DNA of 64,000 nt. Source: Laetmonice hystrix (Eukaryota). Under the pieces are notes generated by a model, which saw only the letters and a program-made list of their open reading frames with translations, had not been told where the DNA came from and did not search any database. The stretch lies in the NCBI GenBank assembly GCA_965235115.1, contig OZ249451.1, positions 10,354,001-10,418,000 of the forward strand. The letters run 5' to 3'. The translations under genes were made by a program, and so were the position numbers. Shown in pieces: positions 46,198 to 64,000 of the stretch (positions within the stretch are counted from its first letter, which is position 1; every line of letters begins with the position of its first letter).

Positions 46198-49100
46198 TTA
46201 TTCATGCTCCTGGATGTCACTGCCTTTTGAGGTCGAGCTGATGGTTTTCTCTTTTAGGCCGGCTAGGTCGCCTGTTCCTGGGAAGAGGGACCTACGGCGG
46301 AGACCGGTCTCGCCAAGGACGGTCGTACGGACGATGATCTCCGTCACCCGGTAGGGATCACAGTTAGAAGCCGGTCTCCGGTCCTCCAGGTACCCCTTGC
46401 CCTCCTCCCCGACCGGCCGTGGGATACGGATACTTGCCCCGCGATTAGCGACCCCTGCCGAGAAGTCCGTCATACTGCTAGTTTCGTGAAGTCCCGTCAG
46501 GCGGCGCTCATTGTCTTTGCCTCCTTTTGGGTCGTAGTAGTAGAGATGGAGGGTGTGACGTAGGCGGAGCTTTTCAATGGCTTCCTCAATGTGCCTGAAA
46601 ATAGCAACAATAGAAGAGCAATATCAACCCGATCTGAGAAAGAAAAGATTTGCTTTAGTGATGACAGGAGGATACTATAGTCAGGGGCCTATACCTGGGC
46701 CATTCGGGAATCCTCGGCCATATCTTCGAAAGTAGCCTCGGGTGAAATAGGTGCCATTTTGAGCATTGCATCGCGGGTACATTTAGCCGGGACTCTCGAC
46801 AGCATGGCAGTGCTTGCAGTATTTTTTCTGCATCAGGCATGGAAGCAACTAAAATAGGCCTACAATGCTTTCCCCGAAGTCAGTGGGCAATATTACAATA
46901 GTATCATGTCATGATACAACTTAAATTACAACATGATTACAAGTAGTCCTACCATGTGTCGGGCCAGTGTCGTACATGGGCGCGGCCATATTGCTTCCCA
47001 GAATTTGATAAATTACCGTATTGACGCCCATTTAGGTAAATTGGTTGATTCATTTTTCTTCTTCAAACGTTCCCCTTCATACCAAAAATTTATATCGCCG
47101 AAGGAGCAGGTGTCAATAATGCACTACTTCCTGGCTCGATATGGGATATGACGGTTCACTCAGTGCCTCGCTACACACCTCCATTTGGCCGTGTATCTGG
47201 TTGCCAAACATGGCCGCTATTCCACCCGAGGGTATATTCGAATAGCAGGAAGTGACGTCATATGCCCGAGGGAGTCCCGAATGATACCTGGGCCTGAGTG
47301 TTATTATAGGCCCATTCGGAAAACCTCGGCCCAACTTCCGGTCGCTTCGCTGTAGTTGTGCTCGGACACCCCTCGACGCATTGATATACATGGATTCCAT
47401 GTATCGCCCCAGTGCGCAATGACACAAGACTGGCACAGGTAGTGAGATGCCGGCAAAAAATGAGTCCCTTATATATATAGTGGGTAGAGCCTCTATTAAT
47501 GGTGTTAGTAAACTCATATAGACCAGATATCATTATAAAGTTGTTGTTACGTTAACAACTTTGACCAAACATAGATTAATCGAATAAAATGACCCGGCAA
47601 CTTCGCGACAGCTCTGCAGGGCCGCACGGGTGGCTCCCGGTGGGGATAGCGAGGGTGGCCCGGCAGTCCGCGTGCTCCGAGTCGACCACTTTGAGTATGG
47701 ATTTGCCGTATTATTTACCTTGATTTGACTGGATTCAACACAATTGTGTTCAACATAACGCATAACATGAGAGTCAAGTCGTCAAAATGAACCGTCACAA
47801 TCGGCGTGTTAATGAAAGAAGTCAAAGTTCAAACCGTCACAGAAAAACGGGTGTTACGATTCAACGGTGGCGTGTAACTGTTTGACAGGCTACCTTGATT
47901 CGATCCTCTTATCGCACGGATCATACATGCTAAATAAGGGATTAGTCCACGTTTTCATGGCTAATGACATTGTCAAGAAAGGCTACAATCCGTGACAAAT
48001 TCGGTTTCAGTTTTTTGCCAACTATTAACGAAGAAAGCCGTCTATTGACAGCACCACAGCCCAGACACTGGCCGTTGTTTACATGGGACGCTACGACAAT
48101 AGTGCGCTGACCCCATCTGACCCAATATGGCGACCTCCGATTGGTATCCGAGTCTCTCTACATCGTAAAGGGCTCGGTGTTCCGAATGATTATAGGCCTA
48201 GGCCTACTCCCAGTGGGAGGGAGAGCCACGTGCCCGCGATCGCAGCGCCGTGCAGTGTGTAAAGTGAATGAAGCTCATAGCGTCAATGTTAATTTGTCAA
48301 CCCAGGTGGTTTTCATTGATTCTATCAGTATAAAGTAAATGTTCTATTACATTCAGGAAATCTGCGTTTTTGGCAGCGTGGGCCTCTGATGGAAGATCAG
48401 TCGTCTGAATTTGACATATTTGAATGGAAATTGTGTCTATAGAAATGGGGAAGTTCGGTCACTACCAGCTAGAGAGAAACGTGGCCAACATTAGCAAAAG
48501 GAGTGTATGTCTCGGCTTAGATCCACATGCAGGCTTTAAGAGTTTAGTGAACAGAGAAACTTACTTGAGGCCGCCGTCTTCCCTCATCTCTTGGGTGGAG
48601 AAGTTGGTGTGAGCCCCGGCCCCGTTCCAATCTCCAGGCATGGGTTTGGGATCGAAGGATACGAGTACTCCGAAATCCTCGGCCACTCGATGGAGGATGT
48701 ACCGGGACATCCAGAGCTGGTCTCCCATGTTGATACCTTCACATGGCCCCACTTGGTACTCCCACTGGAACGTACCCACACACAGCCGCGGTTAGGTACG
48801 GACCCTGGGGTTTACAATGTGGTCTACAGTAGGACGGGGTGAAGCTTAGGGGGACGTTATGTATAGAACGTATAGCCGGGTCTAGTATTTCCAAGGAGAC
48901 ACACCGTGTGTATTTCTGGTCTCGATATTTCTCTTTCTCTCCCTCCCTTTATCTCTCCGTCTATTTCTTTATTCTCTCTCTCGCGCTCCCTTTCTTTCTC
49001 TGGGGAGAGAGGGAGGGACGGAGGGTGTTGCAGGGGTCCGACCACCCTGACATTATTCAACCTCATACTAGAACTAAGACTTTAATCCCCACATCCATTC

Positions 49101-50597
49101 ATTTTACCATTTTCCAAAATCATTGCCCCTCCCTATCTATGATATTGCGACTTGGCCCGTACCTGAGCGGGCATGACTTCAGCGTTGGTGCCACTGATTT
49201 CAATACCAGCATATATACACGCCCTGTAGTGGGCCTCCACGATGGCGCGCCCATACACCTTGTCCGTGCCCACCCCGCAGTAGTACGGACCTGAGTAGAG
49301 TCACAGGCCTATATAATTCACCTTATATGATTTAGCAATTATGGACACAAAAAGTAAAGTTTTTAAAAATAAAAATAGCATCCTCGCTGAGTAGAGTAAA
49401 ATTACCTAGAGGAAATGAGATAAGACGAAAAGTCTTGCAATGAATCAGATGAAATTCTCACAACTAATATTTTTAAAACTGTGACAGATAAGTTATACTT
49501 TGGGCTTCATACACATTGCATTGTTTTGGCAACGAGATCCCATGCTCAGCCTGGCCTCGTATACTGAACGGCCACTATTGTCTAAGAAGAATGCAGTGAC
49601 GTCATCGTGGAGTCTCTGACGTCATAAAGTCGGATGTGACGGTGCGTACGTACCTTGTGGTCCCGGGAAGCCATTTTTGGGCCAGCCAAACGGCCGGTTG
49701 TCCTGGTCAAGTAACGTGTACTCCTGCTCGATACCGAACCACGGGTGAGAGCTGGCAGCGCCCTTCATGGCGTCCAAACACTTGTAGCGAAAATTGGATT
49801 CTACAAATGATTCAACGCGAAGGTCAAACAACAAAGGTCAACTATATGTATGCATTGTTATCTCCTACCGTCATAATCTGTAGGCCTATATCTATAGCAT
49901 TTTAACATCTCCCAGGACTCCCCTTCCTCTATACAGGGCCCTCTTGTATAGAGGATATAGGTGGTTTGCCCTACCTACTGGTAGTTTGCGGTAATCAAGA
50001 CATTCACAGAGCACCAGTTTATTCCTGCCCAGTCTGAATGGGTCTCTGAAGATGGCCACCGGCTTCAGGTAGACGTCCGAGTTCATGCCTACAGCCTGGC
50101 CCGTGCTCGATCCGTCAAAGTTCCATACTGGACAGTCTGAAATACAGTTAAACGGGCGATTGTCACGAACCGCAGGAAGTAATTGGGTAGGGGCTGGGAC
50201 CGCAGAACCCTCCCTCATTCCTCACTAATTCCTCACCTGGGGCCCTAGAGGCCCTACAATCTGACCAAACTGTTACAGGCCCGGCTCAAGCGAGGTTCAG
50301 GGGATTAACCCCTTCTGGAGAAGAACAAAGAGTTCCAAAGAACTATAACCTATAGATGTGCCCCCTATTCATGTTTACCAGCTTCTTCACACCCCTCCAC
50401 CCCCAGGGGATATACCTACCTCCGGGAACTCCCGGTTCAAAGTCCATGGTCCGTGTCTTGGATCTCAGCTGCTCACCGGTACCGTCTATCCACACGTACA
50501 TGGCCTGTACCTTCTCCTCAGGTTGCTCCAAGGCAAGGTACCGGTAGAGTACCGTCTTGTCGGTTACAGCGTTCGTCGAAATACCCGAATGCGCCAT
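46198..50597 (-). CDS. GLUL: Glutamine synthetase (GS type II), 6 coding exons, 403 aa
   Basis: Exons 50597-50420, 50136-49975, 49800-49654, 49290-49163, 48764-48565 and 46594-46198, all phase-consistent. Motifs [71 protein letters not shown] and YLEDRRP. Confidence 0.98.
46701..47283. mobile_element. Mutator-like non-autonomous element, copy 1
   Basis: Ends cattcggga...tcccgaatg with 10-bp TSD ATACCTGGGC (46691-46700 and 47284-47293). Confidence 0.85.
47313..48188. mobile_element. Mutator-like non-autonomous element, related TIR, different interior
   Basis: Ends cattcggaa...ttccgaatg with 10-bp TSD ATTATAGGCC (47303-47312 and 48189-48198). Confidence 0.8.
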
Positions 50598-52184
50598 GAT
50601 GCCTGCTGGTTGACGATTGAACTGTTTCCTGGGGTTCAATCTGGAGACACAACAAACAGGATTTTAAATCAACCCCCGGAACGAGTGTCCTCCCCGAAGA
50701 TTTTATTTCTGCAACGATTAGCCTATATGTTATATGTTCGGAAGGCCTATATGTATTAGGCGTGGCCCACGTTTGTACAAGGATGGGTAGTACTTTGATG
50801 GATGTATGGGAATGAAGACACACGTTGCAATTTTGCCAGATGATTATTAATACTTTTACATTGTGTTCTACCGTAAGACCTTAACATAGCTATAGGCCTA
50901 TATGCTGTTAAGGAGGCGTAACGCCCCAATCCAAACCCAAATCTAGCTTGCTCCCACTCTCTCCTACTCTCTCTCTCTCTCTCTCCCTCTACATATACAT
51001 CTCTCTAGATCTTCGCCGCCGCGAAGTGGCCGACATATAGAGGTTCCCTCTAATGTGACAATTGCCCCATTGTTACCACAATAAACATGTAGGCCTACAT
51101 GCTAGGATCACACACACTTTGACGTCGATTTATAGTTGCAAATGTACACCCATTAACCTTCTGCTGGTAAATAATCATGTATTTTAAATAACTCACTCTT
51201 TAAATTACAGCCTTCTGTCCTGAAAGATACAATTTCCTGCTAATAGATCTATAGAGTTGCCATTTAGCTATTTTGTCGAAAATTGAAATACGAACGAAAG
51301 TTTATGCAAGCATCCATGCCCTACATAATAATGTCTGTCATGAGGACCAAATGACCTTGCTGGGGTCATCTGGCGCATCTCCCACATGATCTCATTATGC
51401 TTAATCTTCCACAGTTCACAACGGCCCGGGGTTTGGTTTAGGTGACCTTCCTACAGCTCTATCTAGGATTGTCAAAATGCTCAAATTCAGGTCATGGCCC
51501 CTTGCAGGATCTGCCCAGTTAATGTTTAGGGGCAATGCATGGCCTCGCTTTGTTTTTACTGGGGACGTTATGCATAATTATATCGTCACGAATGACGCAG
51601 ATAGTGGGCAGGCATGCAGGTCTCTGATTGGCTCCAGATGTGTCTTCCTGTACAGGGACGCTGTTTCTGTCTGAAGTTATGTCTACAAAGGGCTACCGTG
51701 CACATGTCGTGAGACAACATGAATTATGGGGGCAAGTACCGGACCGGGCAGTTTAGAATCTCAACACAGGGCCCTGCCCTTAGGCCTATTCAACGACAGA
51801 CGTTTTGTTTTTGTTTTATAAGAGGACCCCCACCTGACCCCTCGTGCCTCATGTCAAACCTGTCTTTGTAATGTATAATATAAGGTCAGAAATGTACCAT
51901 ATGCTCCCCCACAAGCCAGATCCAGGCCCACGCCCGGTCGCCTTGGCCTGCGCCCATCTCGTGACCCTATATTTCATGCCTGGCCCTTCCACCCGTCAAA
52001 GCAACGACCCCAGGCTGTACCATGCCGCCAAAGAATCCCTGCGGTTGGCATCTTCCCTCAGGTCGTTTAGGTTACATGTATATGCCCACATCGTGATGAT
52101 GTGGTGACTCCAAATGCTGATCTCAAGACGACGTAGAGCCTGCGACACCAGGGTCCGGTTTTTAGTTTGCAAACCGAGTCTTAA

Positions 52185-53702: not shown

Positions 53703-55854
53703 TTAAGCTATAACATGGAGTTCCGAAAGCAACCACCAGGGGCCTTCAGAACCATCTTATTGTTCGTGTGCATGCCTTATCGATGTATCTCTCATGCATC
53801 GTCTGGAAACTTCAACTTATATTAAAATGCTTTTAAGAAAGCACATACGAGGGTAGCGGAGCTGTTTCCCTGAGAAATATAGGTCGCAGCTTGGGCACAG
53901 TAACTAGGCCTACCCAAAAATAATTCACACCTTGGTTTGCCACCGCGACCACGACCTACCCCCAAACGTAAATACACTTAACCCAACCTGGCAACAAGAT
54001 CGCAAATATGCGAGGATTACCTATTGCTATTCTGTAGTCCACATGATGTTTTTATGTTACGTTCCCTTTCATATGCTTTCATACAGGTAGGGGGTAATAA
54101 TAGGTCTATCTGGCTTCAATGGGGTAAACGATGGAACTCATTCCCCCTTTCCTAACATTTTTCAGACAAGAGATTTTAGAGGCTTCCTTGCCAATCCAAC
54201 CGTATTGTCTGTTCATCTCCAGCGCTTACAGACGTTGTAAACTATAAAATTCCCCATAAACGTTTTCGTTTTCATGGGCATAGACATGCGATAATATGGA
54301 GATAGACAGCTCGACGTGCAGTTGAAGGGTTAATAGAGAGGTCTACTTACCCTGGTCTTCCACTGCCGGTGTGACGACTGGGCCTACCCGGTCCGTGCAG
54401 ATCCCTAATATAGAGGCTGGGGCGGTGCTGGGTGGGTATGGTGGTGGTGCTGGGGTGGGGAGGAGTGGGGGGGGGGGGGGGCTATGGCAGGCCAGTCATG
54501 ACAGGAAGGTCACGTCCGTGGCAGACACAGGCCTCCATGTGACCATCCGAGAGACGCCTGGTCAAACAAAGTAACATGTAGGGGCCTACAGTATGTACAT
54601 TATAGGCAGGCCTATCTACGTCATGCATTACATCTATCCACTCGGATATACCTGTAGCATATCAGGTGTGGTGCCAGGGGAAAGGGACACTACACTAATA
54701 AGTTACTACGTCTCAAGACAAAGTACATGTATACAAATACGCACAGTACCCGATCCACATGCGAGATGTCGATTTCAAACAGAAATTCAGTTTGACGATA
54801 ATTATACATAAAGCATGTATTACAGAAGATAAATGCAGAAAGTCGTGTAAACTTTGTAGACCCCCCTAAAAAAGAAGAAGAAGAAAAAGCAAGTCAAGGT
54901 GAATAAAATGTGGGTAGGCCTATCTGCATTTTTAAAGGGCAGGGTCAATTTTTTTACGGGTATACCCGGGGTCCAACGCAGTATCCATGGTATCTGACAA
55001 TATTATTACAATATTTCTTTGCGCGCAAACAATTATTTATTATTCACGTAACGAAGGTTATAATTTATCGCTCAAAAGTTCCTACGAACGACCTCCCATG
55101 TCTGTGGCGGGTGAGGGGGGCAGGCAGCGGTTATGTGGGTTGCAACCTCCCTTAAACTACGAAGTAATTTGTCTTTTATCTGCTTCAAGGGTTCAAGCCA
55201 AACATACACAACAACAACCCACCCCCGGCGCCAACTGGCATCCGCCCCTGCATTTCAGTTTGTGTGTTTGAAGTTGAATCTTGTATTCTTGAAGAGCTCA
55301 ACTGTGTCATGATCCAGATTCGCTGACACTGTAATCTTCCGTCTCTCTGCTCTGATGGTGTTTCAAACTATCATGAATGTTTCATTGACATGGATGAGAC
55401 ATATAGATGTGTCTGTATATACTTGGGGTCGACCCAGCTGACTCGAATTTCAGGTTTCCCGACAGTGATCGAGGGAGTATGTAGTGCTTGATATTAGGGT
55501 CACCATGTGTACGGTGGGACGTGGGAGAGTCTGGGATGACAGGGGGTAAGGGGAACATTGTTTGTATTATAGACCAGAACCCGGGTTCAGAAATGCTCTA
55601 ATCACCAAGCTTTAAGTTAAGCAGACCAGAAAATCAGAAGCGTTGAACTAAAACTTTAGCAAAGTCTGAAGTTTTTAAGAGCTGGGTCTCGTCATAATCT
55701 CACAAGGAGAGGGGAACGAAGTGAGGGTAATCCCTCCCTACTCTCCCCCACAGGAGGATGCAATGGACTAAACATGGCATTTATAATTTTATGGTTTTTT
55801 TTATTGATATCCAATGAAATACCTTCGTTCACATCTTGTTGGCCGAACCTGCGG

Positions 55855-55980
55855 TCCATGGGTGAACCATAATTGGAAATGACAACCATACTGTGGTCCA
55901 TGGGTAAACCATAATTGGAAATAATAACCATATTTAACTGCGGCCCATGGGTGAACCATAATTGGAAATAATAACCATAT
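55855..55980. repeat. Short tandem repeat, about 41-45 bp x3
   Basis: ccatgggt(g/a)aaccataattggaaat occurs three times. Confidence 0.8.
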
Positions 55981-56258
55981 TTATATCTCCGGTTTGTGGT
56001 ATACCGTGACATCCCCCATAAAAAAAACATCTTTATTTGTATGGTTACATAATGCGGCGTAGATGTTCCTCTCCAGATTTAAAAACAATGAATCTGAGGA
56101 ATTAAAATACAAGCAATGACGTAATATAGAGACACAGAGGTCGATCTAGGAGTCTGAAATGGACTCCGTCAAAGAAAACAAAACTGGCGTTAAAGTCGCG
56201 GTTGATCCCCTCCCCATGCATTCGCCCTTTATGTGTTTAAATTGTGTGTTTCTGCCCA

Positions 56259-59200
56259 TCACACAAAGCATTGTATCGCGGTCAAAGCGAGGAGAACCGT
56301 CAGTGGTTGACCATAGAGGTGGCGGGGTGTACCCCCCAGTGGTGGGGGGACTGGGGGGTCTGACCCGTCTCCACCATTGCAGAGTTCCCCCTTGCAGAAG
56401 GTAAAGCAGTAGGTGGCAGTGAAGTCGACAAGGCAGCCGTTTTCTCGGTTCCCTTTCGGTCCACAGCCACGAACGAAGTTGCGAATCGTTTTCTCGTCTG
56501 AAATTATGTTACAACAGCACCATAAGTTGTTTTTTAAATTACAAGTTATTTTTCTGTTGAAGTTTACTTTTCTTATACAAGAGTAGGAAGAAAGTTAATT
56601 ACGTGTAAGTGTCTCCCGAATAATGGTGCAATACTTGTCCGGATCGGCAGACTCACAGAACGTCTTTTCCAGTGTCTCTGGTTTATCTACACACGCCTTA
56701 CCATCTCCGTCGTATGTACACAAGTAGCAGTTGAAGCCCGCTAGCAGCGACAAAAAAAATAAATATTATTTTAACGTGTATTTGCTAGTAAGATATGTAG
56801 GCTTATATCATGTAGGCCTATATACGCTGACATTCAATGAGGTCGACTTGAACTGATCATGATACTGGTAGTAGGCGATACGATGAACGCTAACAATCTT
56901 TTCGACATCAGGGGTGGAAACTATACATGTGTATTTAGGGGGAAAGAGGGTCCAAGAGGAAAGTCTTGCGAAAAGAGGCCAATCAAGGTCATTTCAGGAC
57001 ATTATGAGAAATATGAGAAATGGAAGAATTTCTGCCAACCAGGGACTGACCACCTGAATCCCCCGTCCCCCTGGACATATCTTAAAATCGACGTGTTCCT
57101 CATCGCTCCTAACATACGGACCGACCTTCTATCTCCCCGGTAAAAGTTTCGTCAAATACCTGGAGGGGGCGCGTCGGATGGTGCATACGGTGGCTCCGGT
57201 ACGAGATCTCCATCGTTACACAGTCTCTGGTCATCACAAAACTCCACACAAGTCTGTTGATTCCAGTCCGTTGAACAGCCTGTCGTAGTATTAGTCACGC
57301 CCCATTCACATCCCCTGCTTACGCGATCAAGTACGTCATCGCCTTAGAGAAAAAAAGGGACAAAATTTACCATTTGTGCTCCTACAACCTGGCCTACCTA
57401 GCCCTATAGTCTGGATTTCCCCCAACACACGTTCTCCTATAAGCCTATAGATAGGAACTCGTTTAATATTGATTTCATAATCATAATTCTGGAAAAACTG
57501 TAGCAATTCCTCCCCAGACTCGTATACCATTTATGGAACTAAAGCGACCGTCTCGCCTATATAGAGAGTTTATAGGCGAGACGGACCTATAGGCCTAGGC
57601 TCAACTAAATACAGGCCTATAGGCATAGTTCTATATACTAGGCCTAAATACTGTAGAATGACATACTATATAGAAAAACGTATTATGCCGATATGCTCGG
57701 GTGATGGTCTGCTTACCTTTGTTATAGACTCGTTCTGTTCTGCAGCGTCCTCCGGGACATTCTACCTCATGATACCCGGTCAGATTCCATGGAGACGAAA
57801 TACAGGGATCGGTGTCATTAAATCCCGATATCTTTCGGTTACACTCGTAACACGCGAGGTTATCTGAAAATACTCATGCATGAGAAATATGAGCGATGGA
57901 AAAGTCTCTGCCAACCAGGGACTGACCACCTGAATCCCCCCGTCCCCCTGGACATATCTTAAAATCGACGTGTTCCTCACTGCTCCTATAACATACGGAC
58001 CGACCTTGTCTTCTTGCTCCCCGGTAATAGTTCCGTCAAATACCTGGAGGGGGCGCGTCGGATGTCGGATACGTTGGCTCCGGTGCGAGATCTCCATCGT
58101 TACACAGTCTCTGTTCATCACAAAACTCAACACAAGTCTGGAGAGGTCCGTCCGTTGAACAGCCCGTCGTAGCATTAGTCCCGTCCCATTCACATCCCCT
58201 GCTTACGCGATCAAGTACATCCTTGACTTAGAAAGAAAAAAAGAAAAAGAATTCAACATTAATTTTTGTGCTCCTACAATAGGTAGCTGGCCTATACCTA
58301 GCAAAGCCCTATATAGCCTGGATTACCCCAACACACGTTCTTCTATAAGCCTATAGATAGGAACTCGTTTTAATATTGATTTCATAATCATAATTCTGCA
58401 AAAAACTGTAGCAATTTCTCCCCACACTCGTAAGGCGATGTTCCTTGCGACGACCATGCCATTTGGACATCACCCTTTTATTTTACTGTAATTTTGAGAT
58501 TAAAGGATGGAACCCATTTCCTGAAACGGAGAAGGCCAGCCAGGAAAGATTAGGGGGAATCGCCTTAGTGGATAGGGCCTTTTAAGCGACCGTCTCGCCT
58601 ATATATAGAGAGTTTAGGCCTATAGGCGAGCCGGTCGCTTTAGGCCTATAGCCTACCGCAGGGTTCTAGGCTTACATGGATCGCCAGCCTCTACCTGAGT
58701 GCTTTCACATCTCAACTGGTCACTGACTGGCCCGCTGAACGGCCTCGCCCTCGTCTTCCCATGCCTCCCATGTTAATCTTGGCGGCAGCAGTCGGGACAC
58801 TTTGCTTTTTGTTGTGTCCACTTACACTGGTGTAGTTCCAATAATGACCGCTAGCTGGTTTCAGCAAAGCCAGGTATTAACTGAGTGAAATTCTCTAGAA
58901 GTATACCTCCTCTTTTGAGATATAGGCCACTGGGTTTCCAAACGAGCCAGGTTTTGAAACCTCGCAGAAATCTTGCGATGGTAAAGCTCGAATTCCACTG
59001 GGAAAATCGGACGCAGCGGATGGCATCTGGCCAAGACTATAGAGTGAGTCAAAAAAAACTAGACACTTTTTAAAAAGCCCACTGTTTTATTGTGTACCAA
59101 TATATACAATATATTTTTGCTTGTACTTATGGAGAAATTCTTCCTGCATCTTTTGGTACCAGTCATGCTTGATTGGTTTTCATGCATGACCGCACAGCAG

Positions 59201-62200
59201 ACAATTAAGGGACAAGGGTGAAATCTGACCTGCGCCAACTGACCAGAGCTGGGTATGAACAAAAATCAACCAAGGCTCTTCTGACCAGAGCTGGGTATGC
59301 TGCATAAGTACAATCAAAAATATATTGTATATATTGGTACACAATAAAACAATGGGCCTTTTAAAAAGTGTCTAGTTTTTTTTTTACTCACCCTGTATAA
59401 CGATGCCCAGAGTGACATCGGGGCGCATCGTATATATTATAGTGGTTGTAGTAGGGCCTATACTTAACCACTTGCGTATTTAACTACTTGTATTTAACTA
59501 TTATTTTGTTTAGCTTGTATTTAACTTTGTATTTAGTGTGTATTTATGCACTTGTATTTAAGCGATGCGTCCGATTTCCCCAGTGGAATTCCAGCTTAGG
59601 ACAACGATGTGAATTGAATATAGAGAGGCTACCACTTCACGGTGACGGTTCCGTGATGGCACAAATCGCCAAGGTCGTGACGTCAACACATGAGCGATAG
59701 CGTCTCTCAGATCTCATGATGACGTCACGGCCATTTGGCGACTCAAGCCACGGGCACAAGCTGTAGATAGTATATCAAGCAGATACATTCTCAATGTTTT
59801 AACCTCGTTTTAAAACAAAACTCCATGTGAGCGGTTAACCGGCCTTTATTCCTAAATAGAGCAGCCTAGGACAGCCTATATATAGGCCTAGGCTCAACTT
59901 AATATAGGCCTAGGGCCTATAGGCCTATAGGCCTATAGGCCTATAGGCGTAGGCCTATAGTTCTACATAGGCCTCTAGGCCTAAATAGAATGACAGGTCA
60001 CTATATAGAAGAACTTATTAGGCCGATATAAATAAAACGCTCGGGTGATGCTTACCTTTGTTATAGACGCGTTCTGTTTTGCAGCGTCCTCCAATACATT
60101 CTACCTCATGATTCCCGGTCAGATTCCATGGAGACGAAATACACGGATCGGTGTCATTAAATCCCGATATCTCTCGTTTACACTCGTAACACGTGAGGTT
60201 ATCTGAAAATATTTATGCATGTAAAAGATGGCATAAAACCACCTGAATCTCCGAGCCCCGTCCCCCTGGAGTCTTAAAATCGACGTGTTCCCCACTGCTC
60301 CTGTAACATACGGACCGACCTTGTCTTCTTGCTCCCCGGTAATAGTTCCGTCAAATACCTGGAGGGGGCGCGTCGGAGGGTGCATATGGTGGCTCCGGTG
60401 CGAGATCGCCATCGTTACACAGTCTCTGTTCATCACAAAACTCAACACAAGTCTGGAGAGGTCCGTCCGTTGAACAGCCCGTCGGAGCATTAGCCCCGTC
60501 CCATTCACATCCCCTGCTTACGCGATCAAGTGCGTCATTGACTTAGAAAGAAAAAAAAGGAAAAGAATTCAACATTTGTGCTCCTACAATAGCTGGCCTA
60601 TAGCAAGGCCCTATATATAGTCTAGATTTCCCCCCAACACACGTTCCCCTATAAGCCTATAGATAGGAACTCGTTTTAATATTGATTTCATAATCATAAT
60701 TCTGCAAAAACTGTAGCAATTTCCCCACACACTCGTAAGGCGATTTTCCTTGGGACGCCCATGCGATTCCGACATCACCCTTTTAAGTTACTGTAATTTG
60801 GAGATTAAAGGGCGACCCCATTTCCTGAAACGGAAAAGGCAAGACAGGAAAGATTTTCGAGTGAAATTCCACCATTACATTAAAAATCGCATGGCCGTCG
60901 CAAGGGGAATAGCCTTAGTGGATAGCTTAGGTCAACGATGTGAAATGAATATATGATATAGATTCCGTGATGGCACAAAATCGCCAAGGTCGTGACGTCA
61001 ACACATTAGCGATAGCGTCTCTCAGATCTCATGATGACGTCGCAGCCATTTGGCGACTCAGTTTTTAGCCACGAGCACAAGCTGTACGTCTATATATCAA
61101 GCCACTATATACATTCTCAATGTTTCACCTCGTTTTAAAACTCCATGTGAGCGGTTAACCGGCCCTTATTCCTAAATATAGCAGCCTAGGACAGCCTATA
61201 GGCCTAGGCCCAACTAAATATAGTCGTAGGCCTAGAGCCTATATAGGCCAATAGCCGTAGGCCTATAGTTCTACATTAGGCCTCTAGGCCTAATACTATA
61301 GAATGACAGGCAGGGCCGTAGCCTGCAGGGGGCAGCTCCCCCCCCCCCCACCTGGGATTTCCAGTTTTTTTAACCCACACCCCGGGTCAGCTCGACCGGC
61401 GCAATGACGGCCTGCCATCACGTGGCAGGCCTACTGCCCCCCCCCCCCCCCCCACGTATACTTGGGCCAGGCCATGGCCCTGACAGGTCACTCTATAGAA
61501 AAACGTATTAGGCCGATACGCTGGGGTGGTGGTCTGCTTACCATTGTTATAGACTCGTTCTGTTCTGCAGCGTCCTCCGGTACATTCTGCCTCATGATTC
61601 CCGGTCAGATTCCATGGAGACGAAATACAGGGGTGGGTGTCATTAAATCCCGATATCTTTCGGTTACACTCGTAACACGTGAGGTTATCTGAAAATATTC
61701 ATGCATGTAAAAGATGGCATAAAACCACCTGAATCTCCCCGTCCCCCTGGAGTCTTAAAATCGACGTGTTCCCCACTGCTCCTATAACATACGGACCGAC
61801 CTTGTCTTCTCGCTCCCCGGTAATAGTTCCGTCAAATACCTGGAGGGGGCGCGTCGGAGGGTGGCTCCGATGGCTCCGGTGCGAGATCTCCATCGTTACA
61901 TAGCCGTTCATCACAAAACTCAACACAAGTCTGGAGAGGTCCGTCCGTTGAACAGCCCGTCGGAGCATTAGCCCCGTCCCATTCACATGCCCTGCTTACG
62001 CGTTTAAGTACGTCCTTGACTTTGAAACAAAAAAAGGAAAAGAATTCAACATTTGTGCTCCTACAATAGCTGGCCTTTACATAGCAAGGCCCTATATATA
62101 GTCTGGATTTTCCCCAACGCACGTTCTCCTATAAGCCTATAGATAGGAACTCGTTTTAATATTGATTTCATAATCATAATTCTGCAAAAACTGTAGCAAT

Positions 62201-63480
62201 TTCTCCCCACACTCGTAAGGCGATTCTCCTTGCGACGGCCATGCGATTTGGACATCACCCTTTTAAGTTACTGTAATTTGGAGATTAAAGGGTGAACCCA
62301 TTTCCTGAAACGGAAAAGGCCAGCCAGGAAAAATTTCCGAGTGAAATTCCACCATTAAATAAAAAATCGCATGGCCGTCGCAAGGGGAATCGCCTTACTG
62401 GATAGCTTAGGACAACGATGTGAAATGATTATAGAAGTAGATTCCGTGATGACACAAAATCGCCAAGGTCGTGACGTCAACACATGAGCGATAGCCATTT
62501 GGCGACTCAGTTTTTAGCCACGGGCACAAGCTGTACGTTTATATATCAAGCAGATACATTCTCAATGTTTTACCTCGTTTTAAAACAAAACTCTATGTGA
62601 GCGGTTAACCGGCCCTTATTCCTAAATATAGCAGCCTATAGGACAGCCTATATATAGGCCTAGGCTCAACTAAATATAGTCCTATAGGCCTAGGGCCTAT
62701 ATAGGCCAATAGCCGTAGGCCTATAGTTCTACATTAGGCCTCTAGGCCTAATACTATAGAATGACAGGCAGCGCCGTAGCCTGCAGGGGGCAGCTCCCCC
62801 CCCCCCCCACACCTGGGATTTCCAGTTGTTTTTTTTAACCCACACCCCGGATCAGCTCGACCGGCGCAATGACGGGCTATCACGTGGCAGGCCTACTGCC
62901 CCCCCCCCCACGTACTTCGGCCAGGCCATGGCCCTGACAGGTCACTATATAGAAAAACGTATTAGGCCGATAGGCTCGGGTGATGGTCTGCTTACCTTTG
63001 TTATAGACTCGTTCTGTTCTGCAGCGTCCTCCGGTACATTCTGCCTCATGATTCCCGGTCAGATTCCATGGAGACGAAATACAGGGGTGGGTGTCATTAA
63101 ATCCCGATATCTTTCGGTTACACTCGTAACACACGAGGTTATCTGAAAATATTCATGCATGTAAAAGATGGCATAAAACCACCTGAATCTCCCCGTCCCC
63201 CTGGACATATATCTTAAAATCGACGTGTTCCTCACTGCTCCTATATAACATACGGATCGACCTTGTCTTCTTGCTCCCCGGTAATAGTTCCGTCAAATAC
63301 CTGGAGTGGGCGCGTCGGAGGGTGCATACGGTGGCTCCGGTGCGAGATCTCCATCGTTACATAGCCGTTCATCACAAAACTCCACACAAGTCTGGAGAGG
63401 CCCGTCCGTTGAACAGCCCGTCGTAGCACTAGCCCCTTCCCATTCACATGCCCTGCTTACGCGATCAAGTAGGTCCTTGA
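56259..63480 (-). CDS. GPI-anchored multi-three-finger (Ly6/uPAR, LU) protein, at least 6 domains, 5' end beyond the window
   Basis: Phase 1-1 exon pairs. B exons: 63480-63301, 62019-61840, 60541-60359, 58226-58044, 57342-57160 (RVSR.CEW..GCSTDG..TCVEFCD..LCNDGD + Pro-rich linker). A exons: 63142-62996, 61688-61542, 60202-60056, 57863-57717 (NL.CYEC..D.PC..EC.GGRC). A divergent final pair is 56740-56603 (FNCYLC..) and 56497-56259 (..CFTFCKGELCN..LGGTPRHLYGQPLTVLLALTAIQCFV*). Each domain has 10 Cys ending in CN. All copies are stop-free with GT-AG. Confidence 0.88.
59040..59395. mobile_element. Tc1/mariner-like MITE with about 90-bp TIRs
   Basis: TA-flanked. (t/c)ag(a/g)gtgagt..aaaaaaaactagacacttttt..aaaag.ccca.tgttttattgtgtaccaatatatacaatata is mirrored at the right end. 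Confidence 0.85.
61311..61482. mobile_element. Small MITE with 5-bp TSD
   Basis: TIR cagggcc(g/a)t(a/g)gcc and TSD ACAGG (61306-10 and 61483-87). The empty site gaatgacaggtcact is visible at about 59990. Confidence 0.85.
62769..62936. mobile_element. Same small MITE in the neighbouring unit
   Basis: Identical insertion point and ACAGG TSD (62764-68 and 62937-41). Confidence 0.85.
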
Positions 63481-63744
63481 CTTATAAAGAAAAAAAGGAA
63501 AAGAATTCAACATTTGTGCTCCTACAATAGGTAGCTGGCCTATACATAGTAAGGCCCTATATAGTCTGGATTTCCCCCAACACACGTTCTCCTATAAGCC
63601 TATAGATAGGAACTCGTTTTAATATTGATTTCATAATCATAATTCTGCAAAAACTGTAGCAATTTCTCCCCACACTCGTAAGGCGATTCTCCTTGCGACG
63701 CCCATGCGATTTGGACATCACCCTTTTAATTTACTGTAATTCTG

Positions 63745-63810
63745 CGGTCCGGGTTGGCGATGGTCCTAGGTGTCATGAGCACCTTAGACCACTCGGCCAC
63801 CCGAGGCCCC
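63745..63810 (-). mobile_element. tRNA-derived SINE head (truncated)
   Basis: The minus strand reads gggtggccgagtggtctaaggtgc, a tRNA-Leu/Ser-like 5' end with A-box TGGCCGAGTGG. There is no B-box or cloverleaf, so it is not a tRNA gene. Confidence 0.5.
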
Positions 63811-64000
63811 CTCCCCTCTTTTGAGATATAGGCTACTGGGTTTCCAAACGGGCCAGGTTTTGAAACCTCGCAGAAATCTTGCGATGGTACAACGATGTGA
63901 GGTGAATATAGAGAGTCTACCGCTACACGGCGACGGTTCCGTGATGGCACAAATCGCCAAGGTCGTGACGTCAACACATGAGCGATAGCGTCTCTCAGAT

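What the first reader, a model, noticed from the sequence alone, without database searches (positions are those of the whole stretch)
56259..64000. Hidden gene inside the satellite: a GPI-anchored string of at least six three-finger (LU) domains growing by exon-pair duplication
Seen: the repeat unit carries two minus-strand phase 1-1 exons (147 nt and 180-183 nt). Spliced, they give a 10-Cys domain (L.CYEC...C...C....C / C...C...C...C...CN) plus a Pro-rich linker (DGDLAPEPPYAPSDAPPP). Four complete copies and one half copy are all stop-free with intact GT-AG, and the array continues past 64000. A divergent last domain ends in a small-residue, spacer, hydrophobic-tail C-terminus. The ORF track mostly shows this region in the wrong frame, so automated annotation could mask it as a repeat. 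Established: Ly6/uPAR domains have this Cys pattern and are often GPI-anchored; uPAR has 3 and CD177 4 LU domains. Inference: a lineage-specific, copy-number-variable, glycosylated (NDT, NLT, NAT/NTT sequons) surface polymer of three-finger modules, perhaps for multivalent recognition. I cannot tell whether it has been described.
Basis: partly seen in the sequence, partly recalled or inferred. Interest (0 to 1): 0.88.

Follow-up and report, generated by a model that had tools for sequence, protein, structure and literature searches.

The report
Fourteen-domain three-finger surface protein gene
The 1.3-1.5 kb "satellite" is the body of one unannotated animal (annelid-like) gene whose 29 exons encode a signal peptide, 13 near-identical three-finger (Ly6/uPAR) domains, a 14th divergent one and a lipid-anchor-like tail; the array has grown by recent duplication of two-exon units, but I found no RNA data to show that the gene is expressed.

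Summary

With 20 kb fetched beyond the window, the array resolves into one coherent gene (G000:C21:10410259-10432041, minus strand):
- a 46-nt signal-peptide exon;
- 13 exon pairs;
- a divergent exon pair ending in a GPI-signal-like tail.

This gives 29 exons and 1560 aa, with 14 domains of 10 Cys each.

The spliced domain aligns end to end with an uncharacterised annelid family of two-LU-domain proteins (Helobdella, Capitella and others). An AlphaFold model of one member matches uPAR, C4.4A, CD177, TEX101, GPIHBP1 and Lynx1. A canonical two-domain paralogue with the same exon design lies 880 kb away. The array therefore looks like an amplified first domain in front of a retained second domain.

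Unit identities run from 85% to 99%. They show a dimer repeated three times and a monomer repeated three times, so expansion is recent.

Coding constraint is moderate: omega about 0.6, no stops where about 7 are expected, and all 130 Cys kept.

Not shown: expression (no RNA run holds it), GPI anchoring, copy-number variation and function.

It is a new variant of a known kind, multi-LU surface proteins.

The parts
56259..56497 (-). Last exon (239 nt, enters in phase 1). It holds the second half of the divergent 14th LU domain (D2 type), a Pro-rich spacer and a hydrophobic C-terminal tail of about 14 aa. Stop TGA at 56261-56259.
   Evidence: splice sites, frame; best match to the second domain of two-LU annelid proteins, E 2e-14; sister to the paralogue's D2, support 98/91.
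56603..56740 (-). First half of the 14th LU domain (138 nt, phase 1-1).
   Evidence: 49% identical to the D2 first-half exon of the paralogue; weak DUF753 match, E 0.018; the other haplotype carries an in-frame 3-nt insertion.
57160..57342 (-). B exon of unit 13 (183 nt): second half of the LU domain plus the Pro-rich linker. This is the oldest and most divergent unit.
57717..57863 (-). A exon of unit 13 (147 nt): first half of the LU domain.
58044..58226 (-). B exon of unit 12 (183 nt).
60056..60202 (-). A exon of unit 12 (147 nt). Its long intron (1829 nt) carries a foldback-type repeat insertion.
   Evidence: (very high read depth at 58958-59548).
60359..60541 (-). B exon of unit 11 (183 nt).
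61542..61688 (-). A exon of unit 11 (147 nt).
61840..62019 (-). B exon of unit 10 (180 nt).
62996..63142 (-). A exon of unit 10 (147 nt).
   Evidence: co-folds with the unit-10 B-exon product, score 0.45 against best control 0.02 (weak support).
63301..63480 (-). B exon of unit 9 (180 nt). Its A exon and units 1-8 lie beyond the window (L011, L013). The signal-peptide exon is at L013:3996-4041, which is G000:C21:10431996-10432041.
56032..56037 (-). AATAAA about 220 nt after the stop codon: a candidate polyadenylation signal.
   Evidence: Read from the sequence; not tested.

Best explanation
This is one protein-coding gene of an annelid-like animal. It spans 21.8 kb on the minus strand and has 29 exons.

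Shown from the sequence: a 15-residue signal peptide is followed by 13 tandem LU (Ly6/uPAR, three-finger) domains. Each is encoded by a 147-nt plus a 180/183-nt exon in phase 1, and each is followed by a Pro-rich linker of about 17 aa. Then comes one divergent LU domain and a C-terminus built as small residues, spacer and short hydrophobic tail. All 14 domains keep the full 10-Cys pattern.

Inferred from relatives: the ancestor was a two-domain gene (signal peptide, D1, D2, tail) of a family conserved in annelids. One such gene, with the same exon design, sits 880 kb away. Because the D1 exon pair is symmetrical in phase 1, unequal crossing-over between introns could copy it without breaking the frame. 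The oldest copies lie next to D2 (85-90% identity). The youngest are a two-unit block present three times (about 98%) and a single unit present three times (about 99%). Exchange between units has shuffled A-exon variants.

Inferred function, not shown: the product is secreted into the ER, N-glycosylated (28 sequons) and most likely GPI-anchored. It would form a long beads-on-a-string ectodomain that offers many copies of one binding module, that is, a multivalent adhesion or recognition protein.
For: - Exons, phases, splice sites and open frame.
- The signal-peptide exon joins in phase 1.
- The spliced domain aligns over residues 3-105 of 109 with LU domains of two-LU proteins from Helobdella, Capitella and transcript-like contigs, E down to 2e-12 per domain.
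- The family model (AlphaFold2, pLDDT 83) matches uPAR, C4.4A, CD177, TEX101, GPIHBP1 and Lynx1 and nothing unrelated. Atlas leads are all LU-clan families.
- A paralogue has the same four-exon, phase-1 design and a GPI-like tail.
- Domain 14 is sister to the paralogue's D2 (98/91), inside the D2 group.
- Constraint: 35 synonymous against 71 non-synonymous events (omega about 0.6, one-sided p 0.012); 0 stops where about 7 are expected (P about 0.001); 130 of 130 Cys kept; the only exonic indel is 3 nt.
- Unit identity matrix and tree.
- Unit-specific short-read contigs from three DNA runs match the assembly exactly. A second haplotype differs by substitutions and one in-frame insertion.
- The gene design matches the LU consensus described in PMC6600238.
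Against: - There is no expression evidence. No run on record as RNA holds the exons.
- Run X4 is small and of unknown kind. It holds 41% of the neighbouring glutamine synthetase region, which may mean it is RNA. It has zero depth on every LU exon.
- No close relative (above 50 bits) exists among 1.84 billion representative proteins, so no transcript-derived protein from this or a sister species supports the splicing.
- Pfam models do not hit the single exons. They hit relatives only below the curated cut-off (QVR 26.7 against 27.3 bits).
- A PDB sequence-profile search found nothing.
- omega of 0.6 is only moderate constraint.
- The assignment of the repeated module to D1 rests on position, motifs and a weakly rooted tree.
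- GPI anchoring was not tested with a predictor.
Confidence: 0.78

Rival explanations
1. The array is a young, transcriptionally silent or decaying expansion. It would be a pseudogene, or a gene in which only a few terminal exons are used. The open frames would persist simply because the copies are too recent to have been hit.
For: No RNA support. Many units are 98-99% identical, so they have had little time to decay. omega of 0.6 is not strong constraint. Exons differ more than the short intron.
Against: The older units (85-90% identity, pS about 0.1) are also intact. About 7 stops would be expected from the synonymous rate and none is seen. All Cys, all 56 splice dinucleotides and the frame are kept. 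The only exonic indels, in the array and in the second haplotype, are multiples of 3.
Confidence: 0.12
2. The gene is real, but the 13 cassettes are used variably. Every cassette is phase-symmetrical, so skipping any exon pair keeps the frame. The locus would then yield a family of isoforms with different numbers or combinations of LU modules, rather than one 1560-aa protein.
For: All internal exons are phase 1-1 with near-identical splice sites. A-exon variants are shuffled among units, and exons differ more than the adjoining 154-nt intron (3.3% against 7.0%; within units 1/3/5 the A exon differs by 5.9% against 0-1.2% in introns).
Against: No transcript data exist either way. Constitutive splicing of long repeat arrays is common. 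The shuffled pattern is equally explained by gene conversion.
Confidence: 0.25
3. The copy number, or the array itself, is an assembly artefact of a repeat.
For: Units 7-9 are 99.2% identical, and the dimer block is about 98% identical, which is hard to assemble. The only reads available probably come from the sample that was assembled.
Against: Units differ in length (1280-2339 bp), in intron insertions and in 1-15% of bases. Unit-specific contigs in three runs match with 0 differences. Depth over the exons is several-fold the single-copy depth.
Confidence: 0.05

Closest known systems
Annelid two-LU-domain family (uncharacterised): Helobdella robusta T1FUU1 / XP_009024657.1, Capitella teleta R7TIG6, transcript-like contigs P0003, P0004, P0030-P0043, and the paralogue at G000:C21:~11289500-11290810
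   Same: Same domain subtype: C-x2-C ... C[IV][ST]SP ... RGC ... GC ... C-x3-C-x4-CN. Signal peptide at the start. Pro/Thr-rich linker after D1. D2 carries the I-R-x-F-x-R-G-C motif. Several members have a hydrophobic C-terminal tail. The paralogue has the same phase-1 two-exon design.
   Different: They have 2 domains. One contig-derived protein, P0030, has 3, with D1 duplicated. This gene has 13 D1-type copies before D2. Identity is only about 30-45%.
Vertebrate GPI-anchored multi-LU proteins: uPAR/PLAUR (3 LU), C4.4A/LYPD3 and TEX101 (2), CD177 (4 in the human ectodomain structure)
   Same: Proteins made only of consecutive LU domains, each added domain keeping the generic two-exon structure, and GPI-anchored (PMC6600238). 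They are the top structural matches of the family model.
   Different: There are far fewer domains. In all human multi-LU proteins the N-terminal domain lacks the 7-8 disulfide (PMC6600238), whereas here all 14 domains keep 10 Cys. Cys8 and Cys9 are not adjacent here (C-x3-C-x4-CN instead of CC-x4-CN, PMC4839075). No sequence-level relation is detectable. Here Pro-rich linkers separate the domains, which suggests independent beads rather than a packed multi-domain binding cavity.
Single-domain invertebrate Ly6 proteins (Pfam QVR / UPAR_LY6, e.g. Drosophila Quiver/Sleepless type)
   Same: 10-Cys LU domain and a GPI-type tail. Relatives of this gene touch the QVR and UPAR_LY6 models (P0007: QVR E 1e-5).
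   Different: They have one domain, the scores are below Pfam's cut-off, and no functional link was tested.

Membership tests
LU (Ly6/uPAR, three-finger) domain | Ten-cysteine pattern with N-terminal L-x-C-x-x-C and C-terminal C-N (PMC4839075, PMC6600238) | tested here: met
   All 14 domains have 10 Cys, begin L/F-x-C-Y-x-C and end L-C-N. Deviation: Cys8 and Cys9 are spaced C-x3-C rather than adjacent.
LU (Ly6/uPAR, three-finger) domain | Gene design: a signal-peptide exon, then a set of two exons per domain flanked by phase-1 introns, with the inner intron at the tip of loop 2 and the GPI signal in the last exon (PMC6600238) | tested here: met
   There are 29 exons, and every junction is phase 1. 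The inner intron falls between Cys5 and Cys6, in the turn between two predicted strands. The tail is in the last exon.
LU (Ly6/uPAR, three-finger) domain | Three-finger beta fold | tested here: inconclusive
   Not tested on the spliced unit itself, because the tools take only contiguous references. Homologue P0004 (E 1e-12 to the spliced domains) was modelled at pLDDT 83 and matches uPAR, C4.4A, CD177, TEX101, GPIHBP1 (TM 0.67) and Lynx1 (TM 0.69). The window's own A-exon and B-exon products co-fold with score 0.45 against best control 0.02, runs agreeing in at least 92% of contacts and partner pLDDT 68. On the tool's calibration this is weak support.
LU (Ly6/uPAR, three-finger) domain | Match to Pfam UPAR_LY6 / QVR / related models above the gathering score | tested here: not met
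   The single exons give no hit apart from a weak DUF753 match. Relatives P0007 and P0013 hit QVR and UPAR_LY6 below the cut-off, and P0003 and P0004 hit nothing. The whole spliced domain could not be submitted, so this is a failure of the available test, not of the domain.
GPI-anchored protein | N-terminal signal peptide plus a C-terminal signal: small omega-site residues, a polar spacer of about 8-12 aa, and a hydrophobic tail of 10-20 aa at the very end with no cytoplasmic residues | tested here: inconclusive
   By eye the sequence fits: a G-G-D-G-S / G-G-T small-residue stretch, a spacer, then 14 mostly hydrophobic residues ending the protein. The paralogue and P0010, P0021 and P0003 have similar tails. 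No GPI predictor was available. The other haplotype has Cys-to-Arg three residues from the end.
Annelid two-LU family (D1-D2) | The last domain is orthologous to D2; the repeated domain derives from D1 | tested here: inconclusive
   D2 is met: domain 14 groups with the paralogue's D2 (98/91) inside the D2 clade. D1 is probable only. The repeats group with the D1 of P0010 (96/82, long branches). They match the paralogue's D1 first-half exon best (44% identity, E 5e-9). The deeper node is weak (63/59).

The most novel reading that the evidence does not exclude
The array may be a diversity-generating cassette locus. Phase-symmetrical LU exon pairs would be kept different from one another by selection, while their introns are homogenised. 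The pairs would vary in number between haplotypes and be combined by alternative splicing. This would give each individual or cell its own repertoire of multivalent three-finger surface proteins, for example for gamete, self/non-self or microbe recognition.
Probability: 0.1. Interest if true: 0.8.

Novelty: new variant of a known kind. Interest (0 to 1): 0.48.

Why it matters
LU/three-finger domains are described as occurring mostly singly or in small sets. The two invertebrate surveys I read report one to three per protein wherever they give counts (sponges, starfish), and human proteins have up to four. A 14-domain protein shows that the phase-1 two-exon LU module can behave as a freely amplifiable unit. 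It also catches the process in progress, with copies 99% identical.

It gives a concrete example of how a repeat-masked 'satellite' can hide a large gene, and it flags an uncharacterised two-LU family in annelids.

If the gene is expressed, it would be a natural multivalent three-finger scaffold, and a good system for studying exon-pair amplification, gene conversion and possible copy-number polymorphism.

Tried and rejected
- **RNA evidence.** Two run searches (the LU terminal region, and the neighbouring glutamine synthetase gene as a control) found only four runs of one sample, none on record as RNA. Laying them on 56200-62100 gave DNA unitigs only. Run X4 covers nothing but high-copy repeats there. 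So splicing could not be tested. The joints listed all sit in dispersed repeats and say nothing about copy-number variation.
- **Pfam on single exons.** Nothing useful.
- **Exhaustive profile search with the B-exon alignment.** The top hits P0001, P0002, P0005 and P0018 were repetitive proteins unrelated to LU domains: summed weak matches, a bacterial cadherin-like protein and similar. They were discarded.
- **PDB sequence-profile search with the family alignment.** No hit.
- **Whole spliced domain or protein.** The homologue P0004 and the two exon products as separate chains were used instead.
- **Complex prediction.** Only 'weak support'.
- **Domain tree.** It did not settle whether the repeats belong to the D1 clade.
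- **Earlier notes of the scan.** A word search found nothing on RNA runs.
- **Reading each unit as a separate gene.** Rejected. Only one signal-peptide exon exists, upstream of unit 1. The units have no start codon of their own. Reading through either intron hits stops.
Full report
**Observation**

- Four 147-nt 'A' exons and five 180/183-nt 'B' exons. Each is preceded by a polypyrimidine tract plus AG, followed by GTAAGC or GTATTT, and read in phase 1.
- After them, a divergent pair: 56740-56603 and 56497-56259.
- Spliced, these 11 exons are open for 623 codons.
- There are no N's in the window.
- TRF does not list the array because its period is above 500 bp.

**Extension**

The window is G000:C21:10354001-10418000, in a 627-Mb genome of 35 contigs. 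The repeat continues for about 13 kb. I fetched the next 30 kb.
- tblastn with one A and one B peptide finds 13 A and 13 B exons, strictly alternating and all open.
- About 930 nt upstream of the first A exon lies a 46-nt exon. It begins with ATG (G at -3), encodes 15 residues with a typical hydrophobic core, and ends at G|GTAGGT in phase 1. It therefore joins the first A exon in frame.

The full model has 29 exons, 4683 coding nt and 1560 aa. It contains 141 Cys (14 x 10 plus one in the tail) and 28 N-x-S/T sequons. Every internal junction is AG/GT. An AATAAA lies about 220 nt after the stop codon. The downstream neighbour on the same strand is a glutamine synthetase gene.

**What the domain is**

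Pfam sees nothing in the single exons except a weak DUF753 match. A whole spliced domain could not be handed to the tools.

An exhaustive HMMER search of 1.84 billion representative proteins with a profile of the B exons gave 23 hits.
- The four long, many-stretch hits are unrelated repetitive proteins.
- The rest are small Cys-rich proteins, most with two LU-like domains. They include Helobdella robusta T1FUU1, Capitella teleta R7TIG6, an Owenia protein and a three-domain Clavelina protein.
- A second search with P0004 added 14 more two-domain relatives, none annotated.

Locally, the spliced domains align with these proteins over essentially their whole length (residues 3-105 of 109; E down to 2e-12 per domain). 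This is independent support for the A+B splice.

Structural evidence:
- An AlphaFold2 model of P0004, built with the family alignment, has pLDDT 83 and two all-beta domains.
- Foldseek against the PDB returns uPAR, C4.4A, CD177, TEX101, GPIHBP1, Lynx1 and TGF-beta-family receptor ectodomains, that is only LU-fold proteins.
- ESM Atlas leads are all LU-clan families.
- The window's own A-exon and B-exon products, given as two chains, co-fold with score 0.45 against a best control of 0.02. The runs agree in at least 92% of contacts and the partner pLDDT is 68. On the tool's calibration this counts as weak support.

The gene design matches the published consensus for LU genes (PMC6600238):
- a signal-peptide exon;
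- two exons per domain;
- phase-1 introns;
- the inner intron at the tip of loop 2;
- the anchor signal in the last exon.

**Origin**

In the same genome the best match to the D2 half of the family lies 880 kb away on the same contig. That locus is a four-exon gene segment with D1 and D2 each split into two phase-1 exons, ending in a G-S-A / hydrophobic tail.
- In a domain tree, the window's 14th domain is sister to that paralogue's D2 (98/91), inside the D2 group.
- The 13 repeats form one clade. It joins the D1 of P0010 (96/82), but its deeper placement is weak.
- The repeats' position, the shared C-[IV]-[ST]-S-P motif and the 44% match to the paralogue's D1 exon make a D1 origin the likely reading.
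- P0030, from another organism, has D1-D1-D2 with the two D1 as sisters (99/91). D1 duplication is therefore recurrent.

**History of the array**

Whole-unit identities:

| Units | Identity |
|---|---|
| 1, 3, 5 | 98.4-98.6% |
| 2, 4, 6 | 97.5-98.8% |
| odd against even (units 1-6) | about 96-97% |
| 7, 8, 9 | 99.1-99.3% |
| 10, 11 against units 1-6 | about 95% |
| 12 | about 90% |
| 13 | about 85% |

So a two-unit block was triplicated, a single unit was triplicated, and the oldest units lie next to D2.

A-exon variants do not follow the unit tree. For example, units 1, 2, 4 and 6 share one haplotype, and unit 3 equals unit 11. This points to exchange between units.

**Constraint**

On a parsimony count there are 35 synonymous and 71 non-synonymous events.
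- omega is about 0.6 (one-sided binomial p 0.012).
- From the synonymous rate about 7 stop codons would be expected, and none is seen (P about 0.001).
- All 130 Cys are kept.
- The only exonic indel is one codon.

Oddly, the 154-nt intron is less diverged (3.3%) than the exons (7.0%). Within units 1/3/5 the A exon differs by 5.9% against 0-1.2% in the introns. I cannot tell gene conversion from diversifying selection with these data.

**Reads**

Only four runs of one sample hold the region, and none is on record as RNA.
- Three are short-read DNA unitigs. They reproduce unit-specific stretches without differences.
- They also show a second haplotype, with 9 differences in 191 nt of the last exon. 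Of the 7 differences listed there, 4 are non-synonymous and 3 synonymous.
- That haplotype also carries an in-frame 3-nt insertion in the preceding exon.
- The fourth run (58 Mb of contigs) holds 41% of the glutamine synthetase region but has no depth on any LU exon. If it is RNA, which I could not confirm, the gene was not detectably expressed in that sample.
- No close relative exists in the protein libraries, so nothing transcript-derived supports the model.

**Function**

- Shown: architecture, fold family (through a homologue), constraint and recent growth.
- Inferred: secretion, N-glycosylation, GPI anchoring (tail shape only), and an extended beads-on-a-string ectodomain whose repeated module gives multivalent binding.
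- No ligand can be proposed.

**Comparison with what is known**

- The multi-LU GPI proteins described in the papers I read have two to four domains: uPAR 3, C4.4A and TEX101 2, human CD177 4 in the solved ectodomain.
- Mouse Cd177 is described as larger, with 17 exons (PMC4839075).
- An invertebrate survey of 387 genomes reports one to three LU domains in sponges. It lists annelids with only standard architectures and mentions no long arrays (PMC13719153).
- A starfish survey found at most two (PMC11595613).
- Unlike the human multi-LU proteins, whose first domain lacks the 7-8 disulfide (PMC6600238), all 14 domains here are complete.

I therefore rate this as a new variant of a known kind. 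It is of moderate interest, and is held back mainly by the lack of expression data.

Noticed in passing
window 46198-50639, minus strand: Exons of a glutamine synthetase gene, recognised from ORF translations with typical GS motifs, lie directly downstream of the LU gene on the same strand.
   Followed up: partly
window 58985-59595: A foldback/MITE-like element with terminal inverted repeats and an internal palindrome is inserted in the long intron of unit 12. Read depth there is 10,000-45,000, so it is a very high-copy element of this genome. Other high-depth repeats are at 58367-58563 (depth about 283,000), 60731-60927 and 61322-61518.
   Followed up: partly
short introns of the array, e.g. 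window 63143-63300, 61689-61839: The 154-nt B-to-A intron is more conserved between units (3.3% difference) than the exons on either side (7.0%). Among units 1, 3 and 5 the A exon differs by 5.9% while the introns differ by 0-1.2%. No explanation was settled: gene conversion, selection for exon diversity, or a constrained intron.
   Followed up: partly
G000:C21:11289500-11290810 (+), in L028: Canonical two-LU paralogue: D1 and D2, each in two phase-1 exons of 147, 195, 147 and 239 nt, with a GPI-like tail. Its signal-peptide exon was not located.
   Followed up: partly
G000:C21:7628472-7631342 (+), L016/L017; also C21:15504733 and C21:8004385: Further LU-like second-half exons lie on the same contig (E 3e-5 to 4e-3).
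   Followed up: no
window 56240-56711: Heterozygosity is very high: two contigs of equal depth differ at 9 of 191 positions in the last exon. The variant haplotype carries L-to-R in the L-C-N motif and C-to-R near the C-terminus.
   Followed up: partly
window 55849-55983: A 47-bp tandem repeat, 3 copies at 87% identity, lies just downstream of the gene's candidate polyadenylation signal.
   Followed up: no
window 63255-63320 region (query positions 680-745): A stretch of about 65 bp inside the repeat unit matches dozens of places on many contigs at 94-97% identity. A short dispersed repeat is embedded in the unit.
   Followed up: no
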